A stretch of 64,000 nt of DNA from Fimbriosthenelais zetlandica. Lineage: Eukaryota. Position numbers and translations under genes: made by a program. The DNA is taken from assembly GCA_977030845.1 (NCBI GenBank), contig OZ365118.1, forward strand, positions 3,906,001 to 3,970,000. The letters are read 5' to 3'. The notes under the pieces were generated by a model. That model ran no database searches, had not been told where the DNA came from, and worked only from the letters and a program-made list of their open reading frames with translations. Within the stretch, counting starts at the first letter, position 1. The number at the start of each line of letters is the position of its first letter. This document shows, piece after piece, positions 13,115-51,539 of this stretch.

Positions 13115-13320
13115 CAGCTACCCTGCTATCTTTCCCTCTTCTTATAAACTACTCAGTATTTTGAGAGAATTCAGTTCAAAGTTAAGGACTTTTCAGCTAG
13201 CCTGCTATCTTTCCCTCTTCTTATAAACTACTCAGTATTTTGAGAGAATTCAGTTCAAAGTTAAGGACTTTTCAGCTAGCCTGCTATCTTTCCCTCATCT
13301 TATAAACTACTCAGTATTTT
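13115..13320. repeat. 79-bp tandem repeat, about 2.6 copies
   Basis: CCTGCTATCT recurs at 13122, 13201 and 13280 in nearly identical units. Confidence 0.95.
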
Positions 13321-13774
13321 TTTTATTTTTTTTTTTTACAGAATCTCAGTTTAAATTTAAGGACTTGTCCAGTCCCAACAAGAACTTGATGATCAGTTTC
13401 GAGATGGTCATCTATGTCCGGAAAAACAACATCCTGCTCCACCAGAAATGTCACTGGTTTCCTGGTTTTTGATTTGACATCTCAGTTGCACTTTACCCCT
13501 TAGCAGTTTATTCAATAAGTGAGCTGGCGTTTATATATGTAGCGTTGGATAGGGAGCTGACAGGACTTGGACAGAGAGCTTCATCATGTCGTTGTAGGGA
13601 GCATGCGAGCATGGGTCTCGGGCATCATGGTGTATTTGTATGACAAGGCGGACCAAGCATGGCCATTATCACAGGCCGTGCTCTCCGTTATCAATGAGAT
13701 ACACAGGTCGCGCTTTAACCAACACTTTCCCTCAGATTATTGATCAAACTTGACAGTCAGATTGACCCTCAGCG

Positions 13775-14892: not shown

Positions 14893-16991
14893 CTATAGAC
14901 AATGGGTATATATATGGGGGTGGCAGTGAGGTATTGGGGGTGGCAGTGAGGTATGGGGGGGCTGTCATGATATAGGACCAGCAGTCATCCATCATTCAGT
15001 GTATAGATATAGGGGTAGCTGAGACTTTACCAAACCTGTCACTCACCTCCAACTGATTAGGATGCGATCAGATGATCTGCTTACATTTACCTACACATTA
15101 TCAGCTTATCAGAGAAATAAAAACACCAAGCAATCATCTCCCCTCACCCTCTAGAAGGTGCATGGTTAAATCATGATGAACCATCTCATTAAGTATAGAG
15201 AAGGTAATACGGCGCTTAGCGCCTGCTTCTTTCCGCGGCTGATATGGCAGGGTCAGACCTGGGGTTACTTCTAATATACGAGCAGCTCACAGCAGGAAGT
15301 AAAAGCCTTTGGTTAGGGAGTTGCTCCTATAACTCCTTATAGAGTTGGCTCTGAAGCTTAGCACTGCGATGAGAACAATCCACGACCAAGTTTCTCATTA
15401 CGAAAGGCATTTATCATCCCACTATAAGGAAATCTACTTGTACAGCGGACATTATCTGGCAGATGGTTGTAGGGTTGAGATTCCGGCAAACAAGGCACTT
15501 GACGGAATGCCCGGGTAGGTACTGAGTACAATAGGGTACTGAGTGCTATAGGATCATCCATGGTATGGCTGTGTATCATTGGGGGCTTCAGTGAGCAGAG
15601 GATGGGCAGGCGGGAGGAAGTAATGCTCAAATAACCTGCCATAAGTAGAAACTTATACAGGAGATAAAGGCAACCAAAGTGTGGAATCACAATAAAGTAA
15701 ATAACCGTAAAGCAAATAATTGCTCAGCTTCTGTCGGTAACATTCTGTTCCCTTGTTAATAAAAGCAGTATTGGGTCTGTGGTTGGTTGGACTGGGCTGT
15801 TTATTTGTTATAAATCAACATTGTTGGTACGAGTGTTGCTTATGGGTGGTAGTGAGAGGACATAGATATGGAGTCAGGCAGGATTTACTTTGATCATCTG
15901 TCAGATGAAAACAATCAGGCGGCCATGGACATTGTGTACATACATGTCATCTATATGCGGACTGACCAACACACATTACCCTCCATATATGGGAGATGCT
16001 GGCCAAGACAGAATATACATAAAACAATGCTTCTGTATGTTTCTATACTAATATATAGAATCTACAGCCGCACTGCATCAACATGCAAACATGTATGTAT
16101 AATTGATTAGTACAATAAGGGGAATAGCGGAGCGACAATGGCCTGGAATTGCTTCTGATTGGCAATAAAATTCACATGACAGTCATGCTTGGTTTCGTCA
16201 GCTGAAGTAGCCTTGGTTTGGCCATTGTTAGGCGTGGTTTCCATTTGAGTGCAGTGCTGCATATTTGAAGAGCAGCCTTCAAGGATCAGCCCACTTATAG
16301 ACTTCAATGTCGCTGTCTTGATAAGGCACCATTTGGGCTCCATCAATCAACATTAAAATACTACCCATTGGGCAGAAGGAAATACGTGGCCGCTAAGTCT
16401 ATGGGTGAAGCTATCAATAGGACATACTGGGGTTATTTATGAGGGACTTTGTGACATATATTGCTGAGTGTATTCTGACCATTTGAAATGGATGATCAGA
16501 GCTTGACAGATCGTGAAGGAAGGCCCAGAGGGCTGCCATTATAGATTTCATTCAATATTTATATCTCATCAGATAAACTGCCTACTTCTCATTTTTCAAC
16601 CAAACAATGGCATGATGGATGGCTTTTTTACTTATCCTCCCAACTATTGGATGACTTAAAAATAAGACAATGTGGAAGGATGAAAAAAAACTACTAGCAT
16701 TGATTTAAGATTAGAGGTACTCATAGTACACATCCACATATGAATCGTCATATATCATCGTCCATTGTTATAAATATTTCCAAATGTCACTTATTCCTAT
16801 GTGGAATAGTCATATATAAGTAATAAACTTGAAATACAGCTGCGCAATTGCAAACAGAAAAATTGACATTTTCATTAAAGATGATTGTTTTTTAAGTATT
16901 ATAAATTGCAAGCAAGTAAGTTATGGCAATATTATGGCACTGGTAAACAGAGGCATGGTACTGGAGAATGGAGTGATATTTAAACACCTAC

Positions 16992-17101
16992 CCTCCTTCT
17001 ACTGGCTGACCTTCCAGAGACACCACATAACCGATGGAACTTTTGCCAAGGACCAGAAACATCATACAGCAAGTAGCCACAAATGCAAAGGCCTTGGCCA
17101 T
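16992..17101 (-). CDS. Small secreted protein/peptide precursor, coding exon 1
   Basis: Strong Kozak (agcATGG) with an in-frame TGA 15 nt upstream. MAKAFAFVATCCMMFLVLGKSSIGYVVSLEGQPVEG(G), donor GG|GTAGGT, phase 2; signal-peptide-like N-terminus. Confidence 0.65.
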
Positions 17102-17399
17102 GCTCGGACTTGGTCATCTAGGAATCTATCCAAGCTTTTCTCTCTTCAAAGAATAGCCGTGGGCCTTGGGGGAATAATAAAGCGTGCGTTCAAATGGTGG
17201 ATTGACGAAGAACGGAATAGACAGTCCTCCTCCGCTAACTGGTGGTATGTCCTAAGGTACATATAAATCACCGGTACTTCCCATGTGTGATGGATGGGGA
17301 AGATCTAGTATGCCACCCATCGGCATTCCGCATTATAAACCCAAAAGCACAGGTGTGAGGAAACGAACTCTACTTTCTCACTCTTTCCCCTAGTTATGT

Positions 17400-33211: not shown

Positions 33212-33286
33212 TCAGACTTGTGTGTGCGTGTTGCCGTCGGCATATCCGTCCAAACTGATTAGCTGTGCTGCTGGTGCGTAGGTATA
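33212..33286 (-). CDS. GRIA-like: GluR exon 19 (C-terminus with PDZ ligand)
   Basis: tttatttcag| YTYAPAAQLISLDGYADGNTHTQV*. Ends in the class I PDZ-binding motif T-Q-V. Confidence 0.88.
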   Translation of the reverse strand, partial: YTYAPAAQLISLDGYADGNTHTQV

Positions 33287-34619
33287 CTGAAATAAAAACA
33301 TGCCTTAACTTAGCTGGGGCCAGCTGGAGGAGAGAGACTATTAGATTCAGATCCCACCAGAAAATCGAAGTCAGATGCAGAATGTTTCTTTAGGCTAGAT
33401 CGTGCAGGACTTGAGCAACAGTAGAAAGTGACAAAAGAGAGGTTTTCAGGAATTGGTTTGACAAAATTCAACCATTTTTACCCAACTCGATGTTACTGGG
33501 ATCCTTACAAAAATAGTCCATATGAAAGTACTAAGCACTGCACTGAATTTTCCAAGAAATACCCACATAAAAATTACTCAAAATGCTTCAATATAATAAC
33601 ATCAAAGACGTCACAGTAAAAGTCAAAATTCAATATTCAAAAACATGTAAAACAGATGTGCCTTCCTACATCGGTATTTTGTGCTGGAACAAAAATGAAA
33701 AAAAATCTGGGCGATCAATAAATGCGGATTAAACCGGCCAAAGTCAATGGGGTTACTTCATATACAAAGTGTGGAAAACAGGGTGGCACACAGACAAAAT
33801 GAGCCAAGACATGGGGTAAGCTTTAAAATTGACACATAAACAGGCAAAGTGATGCAAAATGCATTAATGCAGGCATTTCCATGCAAAAAATGTTCCACCA
33901 AGTGTTAGTCAATGCTCAAGATCCGGTATATAGTCAATGGTACATGGATACAACATAGAGGTGCAGGAGAGTAGAAGGTATCCGATTCTCTTTAGATATT
34001 TTAATTTGAAAATGAGATGTGTATCAATCCAGATTAATCTGGACATCACAAAAGTGTAGCAGAAGTAAAATCCTATGATCAAATTAAATTTTTCATGAGA
34101 AATTTTCATTGCATAAGCTGGTATGGGAATCTGTTTGGAGGGGTTAAAATTAGGCATCGGTAGTCAATTGCATAAGGGTATAAGACCATTTCTTTCTGTT
34201 CCGGAAATGAATTGGAATTTAAGCAAATTCTATACAACATCTATACTTCCATGATGTAAAAAGGGATGAAGAAGATGGGGATGAATCTCATTAAATGAGA
34301 TGTACTGTAGAGAGGGAGAGAGAGGGGACGAGATAGCGGGGAGGTATGTTTGGTGAGAGGAGGGGTGGTGTGGGGGACGGATCCAAGCCAGGTGCTATTT
34401 CAAGCAGGCTTGTTAACTTCTTACTTTAAAACCCTCAAAATCCTTCAAATACAAAATTTAATGTAAAAGTGAAATGGAGGAATTACAGAATTGCTTTTGT
34501 AATAAAATCTTGTTTAAAATGTGTCTGGGGGATGATAAAAATTTGTTATTTTTGGTATGATAACTGATCAAGCTTGCTTGTGTATTTGCCATCTGGCTTG
34601 TGATAAAGACTATATATAC

Positions 34620-34739
34620 CGTCGACATGGACATATTGGCGGCAAGGTCTGGGGATCCTACCGCGGGCGGTTGGCCAGTGTCCGGTTTGCCTTTGATGGA
34701 AAGCCGCGCCTTAGACTTGACCGCGTTGCTGAAAGACGT
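34620..34739 (-). CDS. GRIA-like: GluR exon 18 (cytoplasmic tail)
   Basis: ttattccag| TSFSNAVKSKARLSIKGKPDTGQPPA[VGSPDLAANMSMST]. Donors at GCG|GTAGGA (end 34662) or ACG|GTATAT (end 34620), both phase 0. Confidence 0.85.
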
Positions 34740-35872
34740 CTGGAATAAAATGAAATGTTGTCTCAAGAGGTGAGGAAGATAAGAGGTAGAGCCCTGGGTC
34801 CTTAAATATGTGGTGGGTGATGAGGGAGAACCACCAAATTAACAGTCATATAAATGCTGTTACTTGGTGGGTGTAGCCATTTAATCAGGGTAATAGACCA
34901 AAACTGGATTATGTGGATTATTGAGAACAATACTTATATTTGGGTTTGTTCTGTGTATAATTACCAATCCAGGTTGATGAGCTTGTCCCTTATTGAACTG
35001 AACATACATTTAATCAGGGCAATAGACCAAAAATGAATATATTATATGTGGATTTAAGTAGATTATATTTATGTCTTTGTTCATTGTATTCAGAACAAAT
35101 ATAGGTTCAGGAATTTGTTCTTTATTGAACCTCTGTCATCTGATGATGAATTATGTTCCGTGACTAGGTATAATATATTATTATAATTATAGAAAGTTCG
35201 TCAGTTAATACATGAATGTTGACTGCTGGGTTGTAACCTAATGAATGGGGAGCTGGTGTTGGGGGTTGGTGGTACGTGAATAGAGAACAGTAGTGCACTA
35301 TAGCGCTTATAGTGCACTGTGATGGCACTCAGTGATTCTTACTTTTACTTTGTGATCTGTGTCTTTACTGACTAGCCCAGGTCCACTGATGCGATTTGCC
35401 AATGAGTAATCCAATGCTGAAATCTTTACGTCACAAAACCCCTTTAAAAAAACCATGATCTATCCCCATCTAGTAACAATAATGTTTCAGAATAATTTAA
35501 TATGTCGCTTCAGTGAAACCTGGCCTTAATATTATCACACCTGGGAGAGCTATGCGGCAGGGCAAGGCAAGGCAACTGTATCCTTGGTTGAAAAATGATA
35601 CAAAATATAATTAAAAAAAACTTACTGTCCTCTTAGATGACAAATCAGTCAAAATATAATAAAAAAAGTACCGAAAATCATTCATTTGCCAAATTGAAAA
35701 GGGCAAACAAAGTATCAAAGAAAAGAAAAAAATGCTTATAAAAATGCTGTAAAAGGTAAATGGTTGTGAAAAACTTGATCACTTTGAGGAGCCACAGTTG
35801 CCTTGGTTTGATTTGAGCCGTGTAGGTGGGGAGGGGAGGAGGGAGGGTGGTAGGGCAGTATTAGGTACTTAC

Positions 35873-36010
35873 CTTGCGCCTCCTTGCTTCAACCTTAGAT
35901 TTATATAGGAACTCCATGACTGCCATGAGAAGTGCAAGCACAAGGCCGCCTACAAGAATGTAGAAGATGCCGGCCACATTGGTTAACTTAAGCGCGCTTG
36001 CTGCATCTTT
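35873..36010 (-). CDS. GRIA-like: GluR exon 17 (M4)
   Basis: ctcttacag| [46 protein letters not shown] |GTAAGT. 138 nt. Confidence 0.96.
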
Positions 36011-36174
36011 CTGTAAGAGCAAAACAGACAAAATCACATCAGGGGATGTAAAGGGCAGTGAATGTAAATGAAAAGGGCAGCGAATAGAGTAAAAAATGTA
36101 AAAAGAGTAGTAAGCAGATAAGAGTATGTTCTCTTGAGAAGTGCCAGTATTAGTATATAAAGTCTAGCACTTAC

Positions 36175-36295
36175 TCGGACCTTCTTTGAAGAACTTTCTT
36201 TCCCACATTCTCCTTTGTCATACCACCATTTTTTCTCAAGCTTTTGTAGTTCACCGTTTTCGCGCAGCTCAAGGACCGCCAGAGTAACTCGGTCT
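36175..36295 (-). CDS. GRIA-like: GluR exon 16 (flip/flop-equivalent; ends at 36181 or 36175)
   Basis: actcatcag| [38 protein letters not shown][VR]. Donors AAG|GTCCGA (115 nt exon) and CGA|GTAAGT (121 nt exon). Confidence 0.93.
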
Positions 36296-36513
36296 CTGAT
36301 GAGTTGAGAATATTCATGACATCGAAATGAGCATAAACTTGATAACCAATAACCAATTTAATAAAAAAATAAATCAACGTAAAGCTGCTATATAGGGAGT
36401 AGAGTACAACTTGATATTTTCATGAAAGTCAATTTGAAAGTTAACATTTTATGAGCTACACTGTCTTTGACAAGGTTAGAATATATTGATATCAAAGGAT
36501 GTTTTTACTTTTA

Positions 36514-36774
<261 letters not shown>

Positions 36775-36859
36775 CTATCATAAGTTTGTATCAGTCTAGG
36801 GAATGAATAATTAGGTGCCAAGATTTTGATGTCGGATTTAAGATTTGATGATTGCTCAC

Positions 36860-37029
36860 CTGCCGTTTGATTCCCGCACTTTTTTAACCCCTTCCTCGTT
36901 CGAAGCGACGAAGACGCTAGGTTCTGCCGAGCTCATGAAGGCCCACATCCGCTCATATACAGGGATGGTCGACCCCCTAAAAAATCCCATGGTCGATCCT
37001 CCCTCTAATGTGCCATACTTTATCTCGGT
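36860..37029 (-). CDS. GRIA-like: GluR exon 14 (S2)
   Basis: ttttcacag| [56 protein letters not shown](R) |GTGAGC. 170 nt, phase 0-2; GST ligand motif. Confidence 0.96.
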
Positions 37030-37370
37030 CTGTGAAAAATAAAATAACAATCAGTCACAAATACTGAAATCTTCTACTGGTACGACACTGTACTAACATC
37101 AGTAAATCACATGTGAACAGTCCAGATTAATAATGTAGTGAGGGCGAACTCCACTGGGGTTTTCAACCTTGCAAATACTGCAATTTGTGTTGCGGCTCGA
37201 CCTTGCAACTTCTCCAAGTCAGGGACTTCTCCCTTCTCATGCACTCAAGTAGAAATTGCAATGAAAAATTGGGGTTGACATAAGGCAATAGTCGCCAGTG
37301 TAGTTAGCCTATAGGAGGGCATTTAGAGTGAGTTTACCTGCCTATAGGAGTGCATTTAGAGTGCGTTTAC

Positions 37371-37515
37371 CTGTTTCGCTAAGTCGTCTGCTGATTCAAT
37401 AGGTGACTGCATTCTTTCTACTGTGAGAAAGGCAGCCAAGTTGGCTGTATAGGATGAGATGATGATCAAGGTGAAGAACCACCACACGCTTCCAACGACG
37501 CGTCCGGACATAGAT
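37371..37515 (-). CDS. GRIA-like: GluR exon 13 (M3, SYTANLAAF gate)
   Basis: tttctcag| [48 protein letters not shown] |GTAAAC. 145 nt, phase 2-0. Confidence 0.97.
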
Positions 37516-37861
37516 CTGAGAAATAATCATACAAAATTAACTCTACATATCATACAAAATCATACACATTAACTCTACAAATCATACAAAAACATACACA
37601 TTAACTCGACAAATAGAAATATCATCTAAAGTATAAATTATTATACATGCATGTGGGAGGTATAATGATAATCCATAACTATTTTAGTAATAATTAGTTA
37701 ATAATAATCTATTTGATTTTTCAGATGTTGCTTCAAGTGCCATCTATTACATCTTAGACTTCGGCTACAGACCACTTCTGGAATATTCCCAGGTAAGAAA
37801 TGATAATTTCATGATGGTAATTTCATGAGGTATTTTGAGGAGTAAGTTTAAGGGAACTAAC

Positions 37862-38001
37862 CTAGGTTCAATGTCACACCCCTGTTGCATAAATGCTCCC
37901 AGTGAGAACCACAGGGAGTTGAATATGGTGAAATTATTCGTTACAGTTGGACCGTCACTGTTGTCCTCTATGTGCCATTCAAATGGGCTGAATCGACTAA
38001 C
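37862..38001 (-). CDS. GRIA-like: GluR exon 12 (M2 pore loop, Q/R site)
   Basis: ctcttgtag| [46 protein letters not shown](R) |GTTAGT. 140 nt, phase 0-2. Confidence 0.97.
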
Positions 38002-41000
38002 CTACAAGAGAGTGACAGTGTCTCAATCCTCCACTCCAATAGAGCACCTTATAATCAACATACAGGGTAACCTTCACGTTACAGAATAGATTCAAGTTGT
38101 CTTCAGAAATAGAGAGAAATAATGAGGATTTAAGAGAGAGGATCAATGGTCGTCGGTAAGATGTACTTCTGTACAATAAGAAAAGTGGGTAAATTAGATG
38201 TCGCTGTCAAATAAGAAATCATTGCACATGCGCGCTAGCAAACCGCCACCCTTGCGCTTTTGTCGTCTCACAATATGCGTGTGCAACCAACACTGTACAG
38301 AATGCGGGCACAAGTGGCACCACAATAATAGCACAATGGGAGTTATATAGACAAGGTGCAATCTGTGGTAAAGAAATTAGACATCTACAGCAATATGGAG
38401 GAGGGCGGGGGGCCTGATAAGCTCATGTAAAACGTCCACAATAGGAGAGTACAAAATGCCAGCCTGAACCAAGGACCCCACGTTTGACAAGGAGTATAGA
38501 GTGTGTTTTTTTCCATGACTTTAAACAATGCAGTGTTCAGAGGAACAGAAGGTATATGATGTTTTAGCTATAATATAGTAGGAAAGCATGATGACATTGA
38601 TAAGGCCAAATTGAAAGCAAGTTCTTCCTGGTGACACTCTATTGTGAGACAGTAAATGACCGCAAGAGAGCTGATGTTAAGCAGCTATTTTGACAAACTC
38701 TCCGCATTACCAAAAGATTAAATCTCGTTCTAATAATAATTATAATTTAACGGCAACAGCGCCATTGGGATTAGTAGATTCATATAAAAGTCTAGTCTAG
38801 TGGAATTTACCATGCTCTTATTTTGGAAGTTTGTGCCTAGTTAGTAATGCTAGAATTTCAATTTGAATAACGAAAGAAATCAATGATAATCCGTCCAGTC
38901 CTTCTGAGCGACATTTCAAATGATGCTTCTAAGCTACCCAGGCCTCTACGACCAACTGGGTGGTATAGGTGTCCCATGCAGTAAATGATAATGTCACTGT
39001 GATTCAATGTCCACGATCAGCTACACAGTAACAGGGTGGTAATCTCTTATGTGCCAGTTGCTTTAAAGAAGAATACACCTTTCAAAGGGATTCATATTTT
39101 TCAAATTTCAATTATATTGGGATCTGAAAATGAGAATTCGCGTGGATTCAACAGCTTTTGATTGCAATGTGTTCTCAATGATCACCTAGTCTTTTAGTAA
39201 GTGAATTCTGGCTGGAGAACCCCAGTAATAAACACTGGTAAAGTGCATTGATTTAAAGGGAATCGTTCTTAGAAAACAACCCGCACTGACAAAACAATGT
39301 TTTTCTGTATGTCCCTTGTAACTGAAAATCATACAGGTATGAACTAAGACTGTAAAATTCAATGTCAATTTGTATGGTGAGTCAAACTTAGTCCTGAGGC
39401 CAGAAGGTGAGAGTTGTTTGGGGGTACATACCTGTGCTTCACACCTATACGATACCTTTGCTATTTGATCCTGAGCCAACACATAAAGTAAATGAGCCAA
39501 AAGTCAGACTAAGACCTTTCTTTCATTCTCTATATCTTTTAGATTTCCTTCATTGATCCTATAGGCATCTATTTACAATCAAATTGCTTTTTAATACCAT
39601 TTATGTTTTTTTCCTAACATATGAACCATCTTATTTAACATGGTCAGATACTTTGCATTCAATTTATACTGCCACAGAACATACTGCAAAACAAAACTGG
39701 TGTACTATAACATGAAATATATTTCAAAAAGACTAAAAAGTACTACAAAAATGAATTCAAAGTATTATTCAGAGTATTTTCTTTTGGGATCACTTTACTC
39801 CAATTATCTAAACATTAGCATTTGGAAGGTTTCCATAATGTTATATGTGGTATAATTAATTCAGGAAAGAATACTGTCAGCTGCTTCCAAAATTAAACAT
39901 TATCAAGCTAATCGCTAAAATACTAAGCCAAAAATAATGTAAACATTTTGAATGGAAACGAATATGTTTTGAATTATACTAAAAAGGCATCAAGGTGGAA
40001 TGGTATTGGTGAGACTCCAAATGAATCCAAGACAATATTCTTTCTTGATTAGAGTATACTGGTTTAAGGTATGGGAGTATGAGGGTTAGATAGTGATAGG
40101 AAGATTTGCATTACCCCTATTTTTCCTTCTGCCTAATAGTGGTTTCCACGCGCCGCATGAGGAAAGACCATTGCAAGCAGAGCAGAGGTAAAGACGTGAC
40201 TAACATGACCATAGAAAGTCAGTTGGTGATAGAAACATAGTTCCTTCTTCATTTTAAGATTCAGATTTAAGTTTCAGCTTTTTAAAGGAAAGAAAAGATT
40301 GTCTAGTGCACCCATGTAAAAGTAAAACAGAAGAAAGAAAAATGTGACCTCGACTTGTGGAGACGGGTCTCTCAAGCAAAGCATTAGCAAAGAGTGATGA
40401 GTGGAAAAAAGAAAGGTTCTAAAGAAATGATACCAAGTAGAAAGAAAGAGAAAAGAAAGACATGCATGTGAGAGGAGTGAAATAATGTGAACTGAGAGTT
40501 GAAAAAGTTGGGGCGAAGGCGAGGCTGAATTTCCCATACCAGTGTTAACATATAAGCAGCAATAACAAGGCTCCTCTTACTATCTTCAAAAAATGTCAAA
40601 GTATTTTACTGTCTTCAGAAGAGTGTGATGATTAAACGCAAAATTGCACCTGGTCGCCTCAGAGCAGAGTTGCATCACAGTTATTTTGACCAACAAAGAA
40701 CATGACAATATGATTAATAGTGATTAATCCAAACATTCCACTCCACTCCCAAGGCTATTACTGTTACTGGCATCATAAAGTATCCTAGTGCACCCCCATA
40801 TTGTGAGACGTCATAGGAGCGTAGAAAAATAAGGCAAAAGACAAGACACTTCAACAGTACCAATATAGAATATCAGGAAACTTGACTCATGGGTACATCA
40901 GAAAAAAAACATATGTATATATAGTCTAGTTGCTCTGTTCACATCAAAATAGTAGACAATGTGCAGTAGAAAGAGACCGATCTATATGAATATCTTGATT

Positions 41001-41135
41001 GTCATGACAATGAAAATGTCTTATGCTTGCTTGGATTACATGTGCTTGTAATTTGTCAAACACTATCTTTCCTATTCAATACTACACTGAGACATGCAGG
41101 TCATTGGTATTTTATTGTACAGGCCGTAATGCCTA

Positions 41136-41468
<333 letters not shown>

Positions 41469-41917
41469 TTAACTTTCAACATAACATCACAAATTCGAAA
41501 ACTGATTCAGGAACTTTAAGATTCAGTTATTCTACATGTATTGCCACAAAATTGTAACTTTTGAGAGAGATTATATGTGGAAAATCTTTACTAAAGAACC
41601 AGTCAATGGTGTTAGAGTCGTGGTCAATGTTAACTTTAAATGGGGGCTTAAAGATGCTCTAGATGGTCATTATGAAGCAGTCAGATATCACCACTAATGC
41701 TCAGTTGTATCTACACCAGTAAAGCACAACACACATAGTATCTACAGCACAAACCCTCAACTACCGGATATTACGTCATCATCCACTACCATAGACCAAC
41801 AATATACATGAGTACTACATAATGCTACATTACATAATGCTACATTACATCTATATAGGTTACCATTTGAGTTTTTCATCCTTTTAGTTAATAGGCCCCC
41901 ATAATGTCCATGCCTAC

Positions 41918-42130
41918 CTCACGGATTAACTCCCCTATCATGCCGTCCCATGTGCCATTGTCAGTCAGGCCGCCATACTTGCCATCCTTGACGGGTCGGA
42001 TAATGTACGAGAAACCAATGATGTCGGCGAGCTTGGCCGCTAGGTCTACGCAATAGCCTTCAAAGCGGTCATTGCCAACCGAGGGTCGGCCATTGTCTGG
42101 GGTTGGCTTCAACATGAGGTATGGTTCCGT
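41918..42130 (-). CDS. GRIA-like: GluR exon 10b (S1 ligand-binding segment, alternative copy B)
   Basis: ccttacag| TEPYLMLKPTPDNGRPSVGNDRFEGYCVDLAAKLADIIGFSYIIRPVKDGKYGGLTDNGTWDGMIGELIRE |GTAGGC. 213 nt, phase 0-0. Confidence 0.93.
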
Positions 42131-42926
42131 CTGTAAGGTGGGGTGCGCATGCATGCTGCTTTAGTTACTACTCACTAGATGGCGCTCCACAATATCCACG
42201 GTTACAGGGAGTCATGTGTGACATTGTAACTCCTATAGTTTCAATGTAATACCCGAGCGTGAGAGACTGGGGGCCGAGTCTGCCATGCCAGGACGAGAGG
42301 CTCATTCTAAGCACACTTACATTAATAAAGCAATTCCTTGATCTAATATGACAGTCGTAGAAAAAGAATGATTCTCAGAAAGTGTGGTGGATTCCCATAT
42401 ACTTTTCTAGCGCTTTGTCACTCTTTTTCTACACACGAGCCACGAGTTTGTTTGAGTTTGAGTTAGGACGTCACACATAGACTACGTGAAGGACTTAATG
42501 TCAAGTGTATGACGCGGCAAGAAGCATAGAAGGACAGCAGGCGCAAAGCTGGGTCAAGTGAGTTTGGGGCTTCAATTTTTAAATAACCACAAAAATCCTT
42601 TGATTAGAAGTTTGAGTGAAAGGAAAATTGATAGTCCACAAATAATAAAGAAATGGCAATGCGAGCTGATCAAGATTGAGGTTGGAATGTGACCAGAATA
42701 CCCTGTCATGGAAAGAAGAAGAATTCACAATAATTATGGCCTTTTTTTTGGAAGATCACAGAACCAGTGCCACCTGTCCTTGCTTTATGACACTAAGGCT
42801 AGCGCTATGTCTATAGGTCAGTGGCCTACGGGGCTGGGGGTCCAAGCGTGTCACCTATCACACGTTACGAGCAGGGGGTAACTGTACGTCTAGTCTTAAC
42901 ACCTTATATATACTCCACACACTTAC

Positions 42927-43139
42927 GTTACGGACCAGTTCGCCAACCATTCCGTTCCACGTTCCGTTTTCGTCTTTGGATCCGTATTTCCCGTCTCTGA
43001 CGGGGACAATCAAGTAGTCGTAACCGACTATATCCGCTATCTTCTGGGCTAAGTCTGCACAGTAACCTTCGAATCTGGCGTTACCAACTAGGGGCTGGCC
43101 ATGAGTCGCCACTGGCCGCAGGGTCAAATACGGCTCGGT
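42927..43139 (-). CDS. GRIA-like: GluR exon 10a (S1 ligand-binding segment, alternative copy A)
   Basis: ctcgtcag| TEPYLTLRPVATHGQPLVGNARFEGYCADLAQKIADIVGYDYLIVPVRDGKYGSKDENGTWNGMVGELVRN |GTAAGT. 213 nt, phase 0-0. Confidence 0.93.
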
Positions 43140-44412
43140 CTGACGAGGTGAAAACAAGAGCAAACCATGGCACAAACATAGAAAATCTCATCCACCATCA
43201 AACTTTCCGTTTTTTATCTTTCTAGGCAACAAAAACAAAAGGTTGGGAAAAACATTGGGAGGCTTCTTCCAAACCGACAACAAAATAGATTTTGCCGAGA
43301 TTTAACCACAGAAGAACAAAACGATGTACTATGTATATATACATGCTCTTCAGCTGGTGTCATTTCCAGTGGTAACAAAATTGATGGAGAAAATATACAT
43401 ATCTTATACAGAGGTACATCACGTCTACAAAATGAACATGCCTAAACCGAGTGACAGCATTTCCGGGCGGACAATTTGGAACTGATGGCTTGGAGGAGAT
43501 GGCGATGGGCCGAAATACATCCGTCAATGACATAGCTCACATTAAACGACCATGGAAATTATACTTAAACTGAGAATCAATGCAATGTTATGGCTTAACT
43601 CGAGCATACATAGAATAACAGGCTCTAGAGAGAGGGAGAAGGGTCCCAGGTATCAATTTGAGGCAGGGTTAGAGCAGAAATGAAGACATAATGAAGATGC
43701 AATAACCGCTAAGCGCAGGCAGACATGGGGAAGGGGGAGAGAGGTTCCGCAGAAACAGAGGGAGAAATCTGACAGGAGAAATGTATGTAATCAATGTTGC
43801 TCAACATTATGCAAGATTAAAGGGCCGGGGGGTCTTTATTAGGGTCTGAAGTAAAGGCGTTTAGGTCATACAGTTATTGAAGATCTCCCTACTGATACAT
43901 ACCATTCCTAATACTACAAATTAGGATAAAAGAAATGAATGATTTTAACGGTATTGGTACCGAAAAGACTTCATAACTAGGCGGGATATTCATCCCAGAT
44001 CTGTTAGCTGTTTCAGAGTGACAGGAAGGAGCATTGTATCAGGAGGGATATCTTGTAATGAAAACATCTCGGGATTTAATAGAGTACACCATCTGGGATT
44101 GAGGAAGTGCAGGGATTATTCTGAAGGCAAGTAAACATTCAAGAACTGGTGAAATTAAACTATTCTTTAAACTTATCATAATCTATATTACATGGTAAGT
44201 TATGAAGTATCATATGTATTATCTTACTGTATTGTGCTCTATTTAGATCCTTAGTAATAAGTTAGTATATCTACACATATATACTTGACTTTGATCAATT
44301 GATTCAGTTTGATTATTGTCATGTTTAGTGTTAAAATCCTTATGAATAGCATTGTTTTATTAGTTGAATCAAAGAACAATTGGCATGTAGACCTGCCACG
44401 GTTCTCACTTAC

Positions 44413-44523
44413 CAAGATCGAGGTAACAATTCGCGTGATATTTTTGATGGTGTTATTTCCCTTAGTTCTGACAAGGGAAGGATTTTGAATCATGAGCCCA
44501 CGCGTGGGTGACCACGTACCGAT
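44413..44523 (-). CDS. GRIA-like: GluR exon 9 (ATD-LBD linker, start of S1)
   Basis: gttgcacag| IGTWSPTRGLMIQNPSLVRTKGNNTIKNITRIVTSIL |GTAAGT. 111 nt. Confidence 0.93.
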
Positions 44524-44751
44524 CTGTGCAACAAAAAAAATAATATAATTATGATCAGGGATGTGTGTTATAAAACTGAGGTGGAAGGCGCAGGGTCAGA
44601 TAATGAGCAATATGGAGCATAGAGCTGAGGCAAAAATTGTTTTCCTTGACATGTTAATACCGCTGATTGTTAATCAGCTACATTTTGAGTGATAAAATGA
44701 CTGATAACACATTGTATATGTATACATGGTCCTTGTGACCTTGGTACTGAC

Positions 44752-44859
44752 CTTGGCGAGGCCTCGGTTAAGGTTAACCTCCAGAACATCCAGCGCGAAG
44801 TCGCGACGAAGTCCATGACTGTCGAACGCAACCTTACCGGACAATCCTTTAAACTCAAT
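44752..44859 (-). CDS. GRIA-like: GluR exon 8 (ATD)
   Basis: atcttcag| IEFKGLSGKVAFDSHGLRRDFALDVLEVNLNRGLAK |GTCAGT. 108 nt; F.GL.G...FD..G.R motif. Confidence 0.92.
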
Positions 44860-45027
44860 CTGAAGATAAACAACGAAAGATGAAGGGACCGTGGCATTTT
44901 AAATACTTTTAAATTTTTAAATTAGTGTCTAAATGCAGCAACGACCAAATAATTCATCTAGAACTGATCTGTAGTAAAGGCTATATTATTGGAGATAATG
45001 GTTAGAGGTGTTATGAAGTGCTCTCAC

Positions 45028-45228
45028 CTCCCTCATGGTTTTCATGATTTCATATCCATGCACCCAGGGGATGACGGGCTCGCAATCACAGTCTATACCT
45101 TCTGTCTCGTTATTAAAAAACTTGCCGTGTCGGAGAGTGGATTGGAAGACGCGCGGGTTACCGGTCAACATCTGGGTCAGGGCTTTAGAAATAAGACGGA
45201 CCGAATCTACGGCCAGCGCTGCCTCATA
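45028..45228 (-). CDS. GRIA-like: GluR exon 7 (ATD)
   Basis: atcacag| YEAALAVDSV...IDCDCEPVIPWVHGYEIMKTMRE |GTGAGA. 201 nt, phase 0-0. Confidence 0.93.
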
Positions 45229-47357
45229 CTGTGATAAAGACATAGGCGGGGTGGTTAGACAATAAAGTCATTAACACTCATTAACATCACTTAATATACA
45301 GGCATGAGACAGACAGGGAGAGTGCACAGCAGATAACTGTCCAGTGTGGAATGCAATATGTGTATGTGGTGCTCATGCGCCTCAAAAATGCAACTAAAGC
45401 AAGTGGCATAGATCTCTTAAACTTAGTGCTTCCCAACAATGCTTAGGGCGGCGGTGAATTGAATATATTGCCACTTAAATCAAATACAGTGCACAAAGTG
45501 ATTACTGTTACTCTCAGTGAAAACATAACTACTTAACAAGTGGCCAGCAGATTACGCTGGAGATAAAAGTTAGTTTAAAATAATCTTATACGAAGAGCCT
45601 TAAAATTCTGCCTGCCAAAATGGAGAAAGGGTATCCCTTATTAAAGACGCCCTTAAATATATAGGACGTTCTTCATGAAGGGATCTGAGAAGGAGAATCA
45701 ACTGGAAAACACATATATATAATGGTGTAGGGGGCGCAGTCGTATAGGGTTAAGGGAAGAGGGCATCACCGATATATGGTGGGGGAAGAAAGACTGCCAA
45801 CCAATGGGACAACAGCGGGGAGGGGGAGGGGTGGGAAGGGGAAAAGATGAAAGTAACATATTGTCAATTATGGAGGATATCTCCATTGAAAATGATATCC
45901 CATTTTAATCTCCATATAATCATTTAAAGTTATGCACTTCTTCAAAAAGCTTTTGTAAGATAAATTGGGGTGCTGGTCTACAATTGAAAAGTGCACACAA
46001 AAACCAATCCTTGGTGTCAGTTCCAATTAGCAAATTCTTCACCCAGAGTAAGCAATCATTATCCAGCCCTGCGACGGAAAACAAACCCTAGCCGAATCAT
46101 TCCATGGAGAAGAGGGGAGAGGGAAAGATAGAATGCAATGTCATGCAGCCTCTGGTAAAGAGAATGAATAATTGGAAAAATGAAGAGAAGAGTCATCCAT
46201 TCAGAGAGAAGAGAATGAGAGGGGGAGGAGAGGGAGATATTGGGGGAAGGACACATGTATCCACATCGTGTTGAGACGCCTACCTTCATTTTGCGCGGCC
46301 GTGTCGTCTGAAATAAGAGTGGTGTAGGAAGAGGTTACATCAGTTTAAATTAAATAGATGGAGGCAGAGAGAGAGGCAGGCACACTTGGCGCGCTGCTGG
46401 CCCAGTGCTTAATAACCGAATCTGTGCTCCAATGAAGCAGAAAGATAGAAACCAACCAACCGTGCATGTCTCCAACTCTCCACTCCTTATCGACTATGTA
46501 TATCAAAGGCCATGCTTTTTCTTCATCACTTCAGGGGAATTCCTACTGAATGGTCGTGGAAAAATTTCTGTCCAGGACTTTTTAAATACAGGAGTGTTTT
46601 CAGAGTGGGAGACAGCAACGATAAACTCTTAATGTTTAAAAGTTTCTAAGTGGAACAGAGGAGGGACACTTTACATGACAGAAGCAAAAGCATTTCCAAC
46701 GTTCATTCAGAAAGTAGACCATGAGATAGAGGTCTTAAAGTTGGACCTGCCAGATTATGTATTACAGGACATCAATCTAATTAATAACAGATATGATATG
46801 AATGAAATCTACCAAGATATCTCGATTACTCTATCAGCATATTTAACTCTTACTTGTCAGTATTACTCACCCTTTTATATAAGAGAAGCAAAGTTAAAAA
46901 TGTTTTAAATCTTTAGCAAAAATTCTTCAGTACTCGACAAAAACATTAGAGACAGGGAAGTTGTGCATGAAACTTGAGAAATGAGAGAGAAAATAAAAAA
47001 TATGCAAAATAAAAAATGACTTTTAAAAAGCAGTTAAGAGATTCGCCGACAGGACAGATGCAAGATCGGCCATTGAGGATACCATGGCATCCAGAATGGC
47101 ATCTTGAAAGTTCAGAAAGTTAGAAAGTGCATCATCTTTGTACAGAAATACCTTTCAAAAACATCTCTTTCAGGGAGAAAAGAAGAGATATATAGCTCAA
47201 TCAAATCGGAGAAATCACAAAATTCTGAAGTCAAAAACTTGCATCTGTGACATATAGTCGGGGAACGTGATTTGATTCTAGACATAGCGTGACACATAGA
47301 ACAGAGAGGAGAGAGATAAAGGGTACTTCTGAAACTGACACTTCTTCGGGCACTCAC

Positions 47358-47519
47358 GGAAATCTTGGCTTCACCGGCACCGTTCCACGAGTTCTTATCA
47401 AGCGCTTGCCAGGAGGAGAAGAAAGCCTGAACATCCTTATCGTGAAAGTTGACCAGTTGAAACCCGGTGATGTTGATTCCACCATGGTTGTATGCGTCCA
47501 GTCGAAGCTCTGATATTCC
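47358..47519 (-). CDS. GRIA-like: GluR exon 6 (ATD)
   Basis: tttcag| GISELRLDAYNHGGINITGFQLVNF...GAGEAKIS |GTGAGT. 162 nt; GG.N.TGFQL motif. Confidence 0.93.
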
Positions 47520-47671
47520 CTGAAACCCATGTAGAAACCATGAGATCCCCATCCCAAATAGACACAGAGAAATTCACGTCCAAACAATCAGATCCCCATC
47601 CTAAATAGACAGAGAAATTCAAGATCACATGATGAACTTATAGTAAGACACATAATGATTTAAATACTTGC

Positions 47672-47719
47672 CAGTCCCGCTAAAAGGTAGTGAAGTTTAA
47701 CCCTTCTGGCATCTGTTTT
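47672..47719 (-). CDS. GRIA-like: GluR exon 5 (48 nt, followed by a GC-AG intron)
   Basis: ctgttgtag| KTDARRVKLHYLLAGL |GCAAGT. Supplies the conserved HY..A.LG motif needed between exons 4 and 6; phase 0-0. Confidence 0.85.
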
Positions 47720-47823
47720 CTACAACAGAAAGGAATTTATACAATGGCAGGAGTCTATGATCATTGCTCTGAAATCACAAGTACAATGAATGTGGATTAA
47801 TACAATAAAGTCCACATCTTTAC

Positions 47824-48017
47824 CTGAAGGTTTAGTAACTCTTCACACTCTAACGTTGGCAAATCAAGAAGAACCCGTTTGTCCTCATCTGAGATGGTAT
47901 CTAGATGGGACAGTTGCTTGTATGCATCGTGGGCATCTGTCACCCGGTAGACCTTCACCTCCAGAGGCACTCCATCAGCACTGATCGCATCAAACAGTTG
48001 CTGAAGCCGGATTAGCC
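47824..48017 (-). CDS. GRIA-like: GluR exon 4 (ATD)
   Basis: actttcag| GLIRLQQLFDAISADGVPLEVKVYRVTDAHDAYKQLSHLDTISDEDKRVLLDLPTLECEELLNLQ |GTAAAG. 194 nt, phase 1-0. Confidence 0.92.
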
Positions 48018-49609
48018 CTGAAAGTTAAAAAAAACCTGACGTCAAGAAACTAATCTGATTCTAGACACGGACTGACAAATGGAACATCTGGAATGGACAC
48101 GTCTTCAAACAGAAGTTGCTGAAGTCGGATTAGCCCTGAATAGAAAACAAGTAGAAAATTCTGGCTTCAAAAACTGTGAATTATATAGTCAGGGAACTCG
48201 ATTTCAATCTAGACAGTGTGAATCCAGTGAGGGTATCATGTGAGCAATAAAGGGTACTCCTGGAATGGACACCTCAAACCGTTAAGCTTAATACAGTTAA
48301 ATTAGCCCTACATCCAGAAAAACTTCACTAAATGAAGTCTAAGATATCTTCAAGACTATGCTACACCACATTTCCGAACGTAATAGGTTCTTACATCCTT
48401 GAAGTCAGCCTAATTTGAAATCTGAAAACTGAAAACTGCGTAGAATATGTTCACCATGAGCTCAGGTGCGCTGCCTGTTTGGAAGGCTACTTACAGATGC
48501 GTGGTGGGGAATGCGGTCTTTATATAAAGGGACAGTCCAGTTAGCCACAGTGTCATCAGCAGTAAACCACAAACTTTGCCCAACTCGTCTACTCTCACAG
48601 ACACAAGTGACAAATGTGATGCGGCGTTTAGAAGGAGGATCACGTGCGGTAACGTTTAGGATTAATTCAGCACAGCGCCGAGGTGGAGAGAAGTGGCAGT
48701 GTCTGTTAGCCTTGTGACGTGTACGATTCACATCACGTTCACACGTACCTACACGTAATGCTGCCTGAACTAATCCACCCCTCCCACACGTACTACAGCC
48801 TCCTCCCTACCACCCAAACCACCCTCCCACACATACCTCACACCACATACATTTCCAAGAGAATATCCCTGAAATCCACTCATTCTAAAAATGGAAATCT
48901 AACAGACAGAGAGGCCATTTGGAGGCGGGATGGACTAATGTTAGATATTTAGTCACAGAACTCGACTAATTCCCACCAAGCTTCCACGTGCCAGGCTCCT
49001 CTGGCATTCCCTATCAAAACTGACACTCAAAAAGGGTTATTTACATTTAGATGGGGAGAGGCAGCTGACTGGCTGATTAAAACTGGATGAGAGGTAGGCT
49101 GAGAGATTCTGTGGTATGCTAGAACGGCAAGCTTCAAAATATATGTCTCACAAAAACCCATCCTGTCGACAGCTGGTATTGATAAACTGGTATTATATAC
49201 TTGGTACAGTGAACTTCATACTATAATATAGAGGAATCCTTTAAGTATGTGAGGAGACTACTAGAGTTTCTGAAGTTATGTAGGAAATACCACCTGCTAT
49301 CTAAGATAGTTAAGGACAGATTTCTGTTGATTATTTCTTGAAATCGTGGTGAATTATAGTGACCATAATTCACTGCAATAAAGTTGTATAATCACTGTAT
49401 ATACTAGAGTGGATAGACAACTTTTTTTTCTTTTTGTTAATTTTAATTTAATTTTATTTAAACCTGGATACAACTCGGCATAGCCGCTTTTCAGTGTCTT
49501 CCAGAACTTATGTGTCAAGTCCCGAGGGGATTTTGCCAGTAAAATATTACCAGACCTTTTGGCTCAACTTTTATTGGGTAATTAGATTAATTTGAGTGTG
49601 GAATCTTAC

Positions 49610-49858
49610 CCTCTTCACTGCTGTAGATGTAATGGATCTTCTCCCAGTGGTAGTGGCGGGTGATATCTATCAGGGCTTTACCGTACATGGGTCTCATATA
49701 CAGCTCATAGCCCAACTCCTGTCCACTAACGTTAACTGCCAAGCTTGGTGTTACGAACGGCATGTGGAAGGTGGAGGTGAATGACCGGAGAGTAGGTAAG
49801 GTGATAACCGAATGGGTGCCAAACAACGCGAAGATGCCGTTCGCCATCTGCGAACAGA
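49610..49858 (-). CDS. GRIA-like: GluR exon 3 (ATD)
   Basis: tttcag| ICSQMANGIFALFG...TFHMPFVTPS...YHWEKIHYIYSSEE(G) |GTAAGA. 249 nt, phase 1-1; matches the AMPA ATD pattern CSQ..GV.AIFG / HMPFVTPS. Confidence 0.95.
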
Positions 49859-50270
49859 CTGAAACAAAGAAAATACCATTAATACAGAACATCCGTGAAC
49901 AGACTGAAACAATAAAATTAGCATTGACACAAAGCTCTCCTTTAAAAATGAACACCACCCAAAAGTATGTCTTATTGGCATCAATACGCATATCAAGAAT
50001 CTCTTCTTAACAATTAACTTAAATATTGCACTGAGATAAGATACATAAAATGGACATTGAAGCACTGAAATATCTTCTCAATTGCCATGTATGTCTACAG
50101 CAACCTGGTAACATGAAACGTATCTTCTTTGTATACCCTTTACATTGCTGATAGTCTTGTGCTAAGATACTGGCAAAACAACATCAATACAAGATTCTCT
50201 GCTCTATGTTTAAGATATTCTATTACATTTATGTAAGCGTCATTTTGTTGTAGAGGCAGGCAGTACTTAC

Positions 50271-50420
50271 TTGTCGTACTCAGCATGTAGCTGTCATTTA
50301 CTTGTATTTTCTGCGAGTTGGCATCCAGTTTGACTCGAGACTCCGTCCCGGCATTATGGTTCATGATCTCATAGCTAAATGCCGATCTCATTTCCTGAGA
50401 GCTGTGATCAAATATCGCAC
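50271..50420 (-). CDS. GRIA-like: GluR exon 2 (amino-terminal domain)
   Basis: tctctag| GAIFDHSSQEMRSAFSYEIMNHNAGTESRVKLDANSQKIQVNDSYMLSTT |GTAAGT. 150 nt, phase 1-1; GAIF motif typical of the iGluR ATD start. Confidence 0.92.
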
Positions 50421-51539
50421 CTAGAGAGAAAAGTTAAAGGTTTATAGGTAAAAGATGTCTTTAATACCACTGGGGGACGGTTCATAAAGTCTATGGGTAG
50501 GGGAGGAAGACACCACTAACCAGTGAAAGTTTTGTGCCTTGAAAACATGGTAGTAGTATATCAAAATGAACATGTTCCTCAGGCATCAAGTCTTATACTT
50601 TCCACCTGAAGTAAGTGAGTAGTACATGGAAATGAGGGAGGTTCTCAGGCAAAGTGTAAGTAGTATATTATAAATGCATATATTTCTCAGGCGTTGAGTT
50701 ATATACCTTAGTACTAATCAAGTGTAGGTGTCAAATATTATATGGAAATGAGGTACCAGATGTGAGTAGTATATAAATGCATTATGTTTTCAGGCTTTAG
50801 GATTTATACTGCGACTAAAGGTTCCCCAAATGCGTAATACGTTGATCGCTTAATATTGCGTAATACTTTGAAACTATTTAACATAGATACGATCAAATAT
50901 GTAAGCTCTAATAGGACATGAGTATCAAATGTGATTCATTCGCTTTTTTACACATCTAACATACATAAGAACAGGATTTTACGATGCGGAATCATTCCCT
51001 TAAATCAATTTAATGTAGTCAAGGGCTCCATATATATGGGTAACAATAACATGTAAGCATTGTCAGACATGTTTTAGATTAAAGTAGGCCTATACAACAA
51101 TATCTAAGTCGACATCGGTCATAAATCTAGATTGTAGTTATAAAGTAAGTGTAATCATCACATTATTGAATCATATATAAGGAATAATTCCTCTCAGACA
51201 ATAGATATGAGCAGGTAGACAGAGAGTACACACCTGCTTAACATACCGCCCCATTATACATGCCTCATTAATATTCAAACCCCATCCACAGACATTCTCC
51301 CTGAAATATAAACCCACCATACCCCAAACACACACCAAACTCACGGCAAGTCATATAATACTGTATTAACTAACCCGCATGGTTCATATAACATGAGTAG
51401 TAATCATATCTGATATAAAAATATTAAATTAATGCTGGGATGTAACAGGTGTCTGTGTAGGACATGTAGGGATGCTCATTAACATATTAAATATAGAAGT
51501 AGCGGGGGACGGCTCAGTGCTGCCCCCACACGGACTTAC

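What the first reader, a model, noticed from the sequence alone, without database searches (positions are those of the whole stretch)
41918..43139. Flip/flop-like switch in the other half of the binding cleft: duplicated, mutually exclusive S1 exons in an AMPA-type receptor
Seen: two 213-nt, phase 0-0 exons in tandem. Each has canonical AG/GT sites and no stops, and each encodes the same 71-aa S1 segment (TEPY...EGYC.DL...DGKYG...W.GM.GEL). They are 45/71 (63%) identical by hand count. Synonymous sites are saturated (first five codons ACC GAG CCG TAT TTG versus ACG GAA CCA TAC CTC), which suggests an old duplication with both copies under purifying selection. Differences cluster in loop 1 (residues 6-21) and in the four residues after the ligand-stacking Tyr (KYG-SKDE versus KYG-GLTD; GluA2 Y450 equivalent). 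Established: vertebrate AMPA receptors have a mutually exclusive flip/flop pair in S2 just before M4. Here that exon is single, so this gene appears to have evolved its own two-state module in S1. Inference: one gene makes two receptors differing in gating, desensitisation, pharmacology or auxiliary-subunit contacts. I do not know of a description of this, but a literature check is needed.
Basis: partly seen in the sequence, partly recalled or inferred. Interest (0 to 1): 0.9.

Follow-up and report, generated by a model that had tools for sequence, protein, structure and literature searches.

The report
Alternative ligand-binding exons in worm AMPA receptor
An annelid AMPA-type glutamate receptor gene carries two side-by-side, anciently diverged and still-selected versions of one exon of its glutamate-binding domain, so it very probably makes two receptor variants; clams evolved a similar exon pair independently, and I found no paper describing either.

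Summary
On the minus strand lie two 213-nt, phase 0-0 exons (43139-42927 and 42130-41918). Both have AG/GT splice sites and open frames and are 45/71 aa identical, with synonymous sites saturated. Both cover the same part of the S1 ligand-binding lobe (GluA2 residues 402-470, including Tyr450).

The gene is an annelid AMPA-type receptor. A deeply diverged relative (L007) has the same two exons in the same order: a-to-a 83% and b-to-b 77% aa identity, against 62-63% between types. Non-synonymous divergence is 0.10 (a) and 0.16 (b) while synonymous sites are saturated, so each copy is separately under purifying selection. Ridgeia piscesae has an intact pair, and five further contigs of unnamed organisms, annelid-like by similarity, hold two or three copies. 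Capitella, Helobdella and oligochaete-like contigs have one.

Bivalves evolved an analogous pair independently. RefSeq isoforms of Mya arenaria and Ruditapes philippinarum differ only in this exon.

Not shown: transcripts of this species (no sequencing runs were listed), strict mutual exclusivity, how exclusivity is enforced, and any functional difference. No description turned up in the papers searched. This scan has noted many other tandem alternative-exon candidates in the same genome, on other genes.

The parts
33215..50424 (-). AMPA-type ionotropic glutamate receptor gene (coding exons found by tblastn; ends approximate, first exon not delimited)
   Evidence: tblastn of Haliotis AMPAR-like P0130 finds ATD, S1, M1-M3, S2, M4 and C-terminus in order without stops. 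The closest proteins are annelid AMPARs. Constitutive exons hit only GluA1-4 among the best 60 PDB sequences.
44413..44523 (-). Exon 9 (ATD-S1 linker, ...NITRIVTSIL), 111 nt, ends in phase 0
   Evidence: orthologous exon in L007, Ridgeia and others
42927..43139 (-). Exon 10a: S1 segment, a-type (YCADLA..KIA, GMVGELVRN), 213 nt, phase 0-0, donor AAC|gtaagt
   Evidence: 83% aa identical to the L007 a exon, dN 0.10
42131..42926 (-). 796-nt intron between the two alternative exons
   Evidence: too long for steric exclusion; no block conserved with L007
41918..42130 (-). Exon 10b: S1 segment, b-type (YCVDLA..KLA, GMIGELIRE), 213 nt, phase 0-0, weaker donor GAG|gtaggc
   Evidence: 77% aa identical to the L007 b exon, dN 0.16
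41229..41444 (-). Exon 11 (rest of S1 with APLTIT..R, pre-M1 and the start of M1), 216 nt, phase 0-0
36187..36300 (-). S2 exon equivalent to the vertebrate flip/flop region (…[23 protein letters not shown]…), single copy

Best explanation
Exons 10a and 10b are alternative, functionally exclusive versions of one coding module of an annelid AMPA-type glutamate receptor. Each encodes residues equivalent to GluA2 402-470: the first strands, loop 1, helix B, the Tyr450 loop and helix C of the upper (D1) lobe of the ligand-binding domain. Splicing of exon 9 to 10a to 11, or of exon 9 to 10b to 11, gives two full-length subunits that differ only in this module. Shown: the exons are intact, homologous and adjacent; they arose by a duplication older than the split from at least one deeply diverged species; each has since been kept by purifying selection. 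Inferred: only one is used per mRNA. Including both would duplicate 71 residues inside a single fold and skipping both would delete them, although either event would keep the reading frame. Inferred: 10a is the default form and 10b the regulated form. 10a has the stronger donor, conserved in three species, and every transcript-derived or annotated relative seen carries an a-like exon. Inferred: the isoforms differ in ligand-binding-domain behaviour (agonist sensitivity, gating or desensitisation kinetics) or in upper-lobe surface contacts.
For: Anatomy and statistics. Orthologous two-exon arrangement in L007: a 9008-9220 and b 10100-10318, with canonical splice sites. Identities are a/a 83% and b/b 77% against 62-63% across types. 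Selection: between the window and L007, dN is 0.10 (a) and 0.16 (b) with pS 0.83-0.85, within the range of constitutive exons of the same gene (dN 0.00-0.18). A within-species origin (WIN_a sister to WIN_b) is rejected, AU p=0.04. Ridgeia piscesae has an intact a exon (213 nt) and b exon (216 nt) with AG/GT sites. WIN_b, L007_b, Ridgeia_b and L010_3 group at 80/94 support. L008, L009, L010, L011 and L013 hold two or three tandem S1 exons next to an exon 11 that is 88-95% identical where the contig includes it. Independent precedent for either/or use: RefSeq isoforms of Mya arenaria (P0171/P0443) and Ruditapes philippinarum (P0179/P0445) differ only in this exon, and the two Mya exons lie in tandem in the genome. 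Both exons cover the same Pfam positions, so double inclusion would duplicate part of a domain.
Against: There is no transcript evidence for this species or for any annelid b-type exon. Both run searches listed nothing. All transcript-derived or annotated annelid proteins seen (P0170/P0271, P0274, Ridgeia P0176, the mRNA-like contig L012) carry an a-like exon. Both exons are multiples of three, so neither double inclusion nor double skipping is policed by frameshift and NMD. The intron between them (796 nt) is too long for steric exclusion. No conserved intronic element or reproducible RNA pairing was found. The S1 tree has only 71 columns and weak resolution, and Ridgeia's pair could be an independent duplication (AU p=0.28). 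The bivalve isoforms are computational RefSeq models whose read support I could not inspect.
Confidence: 0.8

Rival explanations
1. Exon 10b (or 10a) is an unused relic of an exon duplication, a pseudo-exon that is never spliced into functional mRNA.
For: No b-type transcript was seen among the few annelid transcripts available. 10b has the weaker splice sites.
Against: The b exon is open, keeps its length to within 0-2 codons and keeps AG/GT sites in the window, L007 and Ridgeia. b-b dN is 0.16 while synonymous sites are saturated, the same range as constitutive exons. Under neutrality a 71-codon frame stays open with probability of about 0.03 per lineage ((61/64)^71, my arithmetic). PF10613 scores 10b higher than 10a.
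Confidence: 0.04
2. The exons are not exclusive: both are included together, or one is an optional cassette added to the other, giving a subunit with a duplicated S1 segment.
For: Both are 213 nt and phase 0-0, so including both keeps the frame. No exclusivity mechanism was found.
Against: Both encode the same Pfam positions 11-76 of one domain, so a tandem copy would disrupt the bilobed fold. That consequence is an inference from established iGluR structures. In the bivalve analogue the annotated isoforms carry one exon or the other, never both. All full-length relatives retrieved have one S1 segment, except evident mis-assemblies such as P0012.
Confidence: 0.08
3. The pair is an assembly artefact or a collapsed or duplicated haplotype.
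For: None beyond the tandem arrangement.
Against: The copies share only 59% nt identity with saturated synonymous sites. The same arrangement occurs in independent assemblies of other species.
Confidence: 0.01

Closest known systems
Vertebrate AMPA receptor flip/flop exons (GRIA1-4)
   Same: A mutually exclusive pair of tandem-duplicated, homologous exons inside the ligand-binding domain of an AMPA-type subunit, doubling the number of subunit variants. It arose by intragenic duplication (Chen et al. 2006, as cited in PMC13520880).
   Different: Flip/flop lies in S2 just before M4 and alters the dimer-interface region that controls desensitisation (established knowledge). The pair here lies in S1 (GluA2 402-470) and does not include helix D or J. 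The flip/flop-equivalent exon is single here. The origin is independent and annelid-specific. Function is untested.
Bivalve AMPAR-like S1 isoform pairs in RefSeq: Mya arenaria XP_052791387/XP_052791388 and Ruditapes philippinarum XP_060554332/XP_060554333
   Same: Same exon with the same boundaries (…TTIM|EAPY…GELTRD|EVDLAIAPLT), tandem copies in the genome, and isoforms that differ only in this exon.
   Different: Both bivalve exon types sit inside the bivalve clade of the S1 tree (99/94), so this is a separate duplication. The exon lengths differ (about 231 and 216 nt in Mya). The bivalve exons carry extra cysteines. These are predicted isoforms, and I found no paper discussing them.
Mutually exclusive exons in other ligand-gated channels (insect nAChR alpha6; insect GluCl exon 3)
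   Same: Tandem-duplicated alternative exons that swap part of the ligand-binding region of a neurotransmitter-gated channel (PMC1919356, PMC13512814; listed).
   Different: Different receptor superfamily (Cys-loop) and different phyla.
Tandem exon duplication-derived substitution events in general
   Same: Adjacent homologous exons of equal phase, ancient, both under selection, used one at a time (PMC9013439, PMC9741552, PMC6071210).
   Different: No competing RNA structure or other exclusivity mechanism could be identified here.

Membership tests
AMPA-type ionotropic glutamate receptor (GluA clade) | ATD - S1 - M1/M2/M3 - S2 - M4 architecture | tested here: met
   tblastn with P0130 finds all parts in order. 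Pfam finds PF10613 and PF00060 on single exons.
AMPA-type ionotropic glutamate receptor (GluA clade) | Closer to GluA than to kainate or NMDA subunits | tested here: met
   Exons 11 and 15 hit only GluA1-4 among the 60 best PDB sequences, at E 1e-34 and 2e-18. Exons 11-15 are 80-90% identical to vertebrate GluA2-4. The alternative exon itself scores about as well against kainate receptors.
AMPA-type ionotropic glutamate receptor (GluA clade) | Pore motifs: MQQG (Q at the Q/R site) and SYTANLAAF | tested here: met
   Read directly from the translated exons 12 and 13.
AMPA-type ionotropic glutamate receptor (GluA clade) | Glutamate/AMPA-gated cation current | not testable with these tools
   Needs heterologous expression.
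Mutually exclusive tandem-duplicated exons | Adjacent homologous exons of the same phase encoding the same protein segment | tested here: met
Mutually exclusive tandem-duplicated exons | Each copy kept by purifying selection | tested here: met
   Orthologous a and b exons in L007: dN 0.10 and 0.16 with saturated pS. Intact pair in Ridgeia.
Mutually exclusive tandem-duplicated exons | Mature mRNAs contain exactly one of the exons | not testable with these tools
   No sequencing run was listed. Annotated either/or isoforms exist only in the independent bivalve analogue.
Mutually exclusive tandem-duplicated exons | An identifiable mechanism of exclusivity (frame incompatibility with NMD, steric hindrance, or competing RNA structures) | tested here: inconclusive
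   Frame incompatibility is absent, because 213 nt is a multiple of 3. The 796-nt intron excludes steric hindrance. There are no conserved intronic blocks. The weak inverted repeats and duplex z-scores are not reproduced across species.
Vertebrate flip/flop module | Alternative pair located in S2 immediately before M4 | tested here: not met
   The pair lies in S1, and the S2 exon 36300..36187 is single.
Vertebrate flip/flop module | Common descent with the vertebrate duplication | tested here: not met
   Different exon. The a and b exons fall among annelid S1 sequences in the trees.

The most novel reading that the evidence does not exclude
AMPA receptors have repeatedly evolved swappable ligand-binding-domain exons: flip/flop in S2 of vertebrates, an S1 pair in bivalves, and an old cluster of two or three S1 exons in a subset of annelids that predates the split of the window's lineage from siboglinid tube worms. 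On this reading the annelid a and b modules are co-adapted helix B/helix C cores plus divergent loop 1 and post-Tyr450 loops, and they give subunits with measurably different agonist sensitivity, gating kinetics or partner contacts, with b expressed in a restricted set of cells.
Probability: 0.55. Interest if true: 0.72.

Novelty: new variant of a known kind. Interest (0 to 1): 0.62.

Why it matters
Flip/flop splicing is a textbook way in which vertebrates tune fast excitatory transmission. A 2026 comparative study of bilaterian AMPA receptors states that alternative splicing of invertebrate AMPARs still has to be studied (PMC13520880). Here one annelid gene, and independently a bivalve gene, swap a different part of the same domain. 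This offers a natural experiment on which parts of the ligand-binding domain can be exchanged to retune an AMPA receptor, and a case of convergent evolution of receptor diversity by exon duplication rather than gene duplication. It is directly testable by RT-PCR and by expressing the two isoforms. It also warns annotators and phylogeneticists that published single-isoform models of lophotrochozoan AMPARs omit part of the repertoire.

Tried and rejected
1. RNA evidence. The look-up of sequencing runs was run on 41100-44700 (rna) and 41200-43200 (any). Neither listed a run, so read laying could not be used.

2. A fragment alignment of all window exons to P0130 (A1) was misaligned by MAFFT and discarded. 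A2 (P0130:380-914 plus the two exons) was used instead.

3. The representative search with 10b returned mostly single-exon genomic ORFs that read into the intron. It gave no transcripts and no close relative.

4. The region search with P0170 found few annelid proteins and not the window's own protein.

5. The 90% clusters of annelid AMPARs held no isoform with an alternative S1 exon.

6. I looked for docking/selector RNA structures. There are no conserved intronic blocks between the window, L007 and Ridgeia. Inverted repeats are weak; the best window pair, 41446-41469 with 42898-42921, is 75% complementary over 24 nt. Duplex energies stand out only in the window (z -2.1 and -3.3) and not in the other two species. 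I rejected this as evidence.

7. A suspected alternative S1 exon in the 937-aa vertebrate GluA2 isoforms was only species variation.

8. P0213 and P0171 were not on record for locus retrieval, and the P0010 locus came without DNA.

9. The WGS prefixes of the metagenome contigs were not found in any paper, so the species of L007-L013 remain unnamed.

Full report
**1. What is in the window.**
The finding lies on the minus strand. Two exons, 43139..42927 (10a) and 42130..41918 (10b), are each 213 nt (71 codons) and free of stops. Both are bounded by cag| acceptors, with donors AAC|gtaagt and GAG|gtaggc. They are 45/71 aa and 126/213 nt identical. Only 24 of 71 third codon positions agree. Nei-Gojobori gives pS 0.93 (saturated) and pN 0.25.

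Exon 9 (44523..44413) ends in phase 0 with …TRIVTSIL. Exon 11 (41444..41229) starts in phase 0 with [12 protein letters not shown]. Either exon alone gives the canonical S1 sequence.

Both peptides match Pfam PF10613 over the same profile positions 11-76, at 66.4 and 69.6 bits against a cut-off of 30. Both hit iGluR S1 lobes in the PDB at E 1e-16 to 1e-19. Aligned to GluA2, the exon corresponds to residues 402-470 and its DGKYG tyrosine to Y450 (numbering from my knowledge of GluA2).

**2. The gene.**
tblastn with a molluscan AMPAR-like protein finds the amino-terminal domain, S1, M1-M3, S2, M4 and the C-terminus in order between about 50424 and 33215. The pore exon reads MQQG and M3 reads SYTANLAAF. 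Exons 11 and 15 hit only GluA1-4 among the 60 best PDB sequences. The nearest proteins overall are annelid:
- an unnamed JGI/Logan transcript (P0170),
- Ridgeia piscesae,
- Hirudo verbana GluR2,
- Capitella teleta,
- Helobdella robusta.

This is an annelid AMPA-type receptor gene. Only exon 10 has a second copy in the window at tblastn E<=1, so the exon equivalent to flip/flop (36300..36187) is single.

**3. Are both copies kept by selection?**
A search with the open frame around 10b found a 134-aa genomic ORF that is 77% identical (P0416). Its contig (L007, an ENA assembly of an unnamed species) holds the orthologous gene with both exons in the same order. Exon a lies at 9008-9220 (213 nt) and exon b at 10100-10318 (219 nt). 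Both have canonical splice sites and sit between exon 9 and exon 11.

Identities are a/a 83% and b/b 77%, against 62-63% across types. The duplication therefore predates the split of the two species. An AU test rejects WIN_a and WIN_b as sisters (p=0.04).

The two species are deeply diverged, with pS 0.52-0.95 in all exons. Even so, dN is 0.10 for a and 0.16 for b, inside the range of the constitutive exons (0.00-0.18). This is the lineage-separated test that a comparison of the two copies in one genome cannot give. Each copy has been under purifying selection since the split.

**4. How widespread is the cluster?**
- **Ridgeia piscesae (L001):** an intact a exon (213 nt) and an intact b exon (216 nt, cag|…GGT|gtaagt), 2.4 kb apart.
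- **L008:** three copies, of which the first shows a 1-nt frameshift in a contig of 1.46x coverage.
- **Metagenome contigs L009, L010 and L013:** three copies each.
- **L011:** two copies.
- Where the contig includes exon 11 (L008, L009, L010 and L013), it is 88-95% identical to the window's.
- **Single exon:** Capitella (L002), Helobdella (L003) and many JGI contigs that I take to be oligochaete-like.

In a 71-column tree, WIN_b, L007_b, Ridgeia_b and L010_3 group at 80/94 support, and the middle copies of the three-exon clusters group at 86/84. Resolution is weak, and an independent duplication in Ridgeia is not rejected (p=0.28).

Four type-defining residues are shared by the window, L007 and Ridgeia. 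At GluA2-equivalent positions 426, 432, 464 and 468 the a exons read A, I, V, V and the b exons read V, L, I, I. By my knowledge of GluA2 these are conservative substitutions in helices B and C that look co-adapted. Loop 1 and the residues after Tyr450 vary between species as well as between types.

**5. An independent equivalent in bivalves.**
Among the 90% clusters of molluscan AMPAR-like proteins, two RefSeq isoform pairs differ only in this exon, with identical boundaries:
- Mya arenaria XP_052791388 / XP_052791387,
- Ruditapes philippinarum XP_060554333 / XP_060554332.

In the Mya genome the two exons lie in tandem between the exon 9 and exon 11 equivalents. Both bivalve types fall inside the bivalve clade of the S1 tree (99/94), so this duplication is separate from the annelid one. 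Other molluscan isoform pairs differ elsewhere, mainly by a C-terminal cassette of 34-36 aa.

**6. What is not shown.**
- No sequencing run was listed for this DNA, so no junction could be counted.
- All annelid transcripts or annotations seen carry an a-like exon.
- Exclusivity is inferred from the fold, because both exons encode the same half-domain, and from the bivalve isoforms.
- The frame does not enforce it, because 213 is a multiple of 3.
- Steric hindrance does not enforce it, because the intron is 796 nt.
- No conserved intronic element or reproducible RNA pairing was found.
- The a donor AAC|gtaagt is identical in the window, L007 and Ridgeia. The b donor is GAG|gtagg in the window and L007. 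I read this as a being the default exon and b the regulated one, which is an inference.

**7. Comparison with what is known.**
The arrangement works like flip/flop in gene architecture but is not a member of it. It lies in S1, not S2. It does not include the helix D/J interface elements (established knowledge). It arose separately. I found no description of it. A 2026 comparative AMPAR paper says invertebrate AMPAR splicing remains to be studied. Searches on mutually exclusive exons with iGluRs, and on mollusc or annelid AMPARs, gave nothing relevant. An oyster iGluR survey does not mention isoforms. The library is incomplete, so this is 'not found', not 'does not exist'.

Notes from this scan list many other tandem alternative-exon candidates in the same genome, in Vsx, nAChR, Pax2/5/8, ARNT, usherin and AP-2. 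The general phenomenon is therefore common here, and this is one instance of it.

**8. Verdict.**
- **Observation:** confirmed.
- **Interpretation:** supported for age and selection; inferred for exclusivity and function.
- **Correction:** the module is shared among annelids and paralleled in bivalves.
- **Class:** a new variant of a known kind.

Noticed in passing
window 48140-48114 and 48022-47996 (minus strand): The acceptor plus the first 22 nt of an amino-terminal-domain exon (ttcag|GGCTAATCCG.CTTCAGCAACT) occurs twice, 26/27 identical and about 118 nt apart. Using the upstream copy would read GLIRLQQLLFEDVS… into a stop. It may be a decoy acceptor or poison exon.
   Followed up: partly
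L008: 6143-6256 / 6394-6453; 13284-13403 / 13490-13603; 16471-16602 / 16976-17104: In this unnamed relative the orthologous AMPAR gene also has second copies of exon 9, of part of exon 14 (S2) and of the M4 exon. One exon-14 copy carries a stop in a low-coverage contig. The window gene has none of these.
   Followed up: partly
Owenia fusiformis proteins P0213 vs P0275: Two annotated products of one Owenia AMPAR gene differ in a block at residues 691-721 (S2). This may be another alternative LBD exon.
   Followed up: no
L012 (Ga0307400_10032664), 237-1670: An mRNA-like metagenome contig encodes an AMPAR-like protein with a signal peptide joined almost directly to S1 (no amino-terminal domain) and without the M2 pore exon. 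It carries an a-like S1 exon.
   Followed up: no
Molluscan proteins P0130/P0431, P0152/P0439, P0177/P0444, P0180/P0446, P0278/P0279: Gastropod, scallop and squid AMPAR-like genes share an optional C-terminal cassette of 34-36 residues. In squid the two forms are named database entries (Q9U0T0 and Q86G57).
   Followed up: no
Bivalve S1 exons (P0171, P0443, P0179, P0445 and relatives): Both bivalve exon types carry two cysteines absent from annelid and vertebrate AMPARs, one in loop 1 (…CG…) and one in the strand before the Tyr450 loop (…IC…). They may form an extra disulfide.
   Followed up: no
window 42927-43139 vs L001 14146-14206: The last 49 nt of exon 10a plus its 6-nt gtaagt donor (55 nt in all) are 89% identical at the nucleotide level to Ridgeia, despite saturated synonymous sites elsewhere. 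The L007 species does not share this, so it is probably chance or codon bias.
   Followed up: partly
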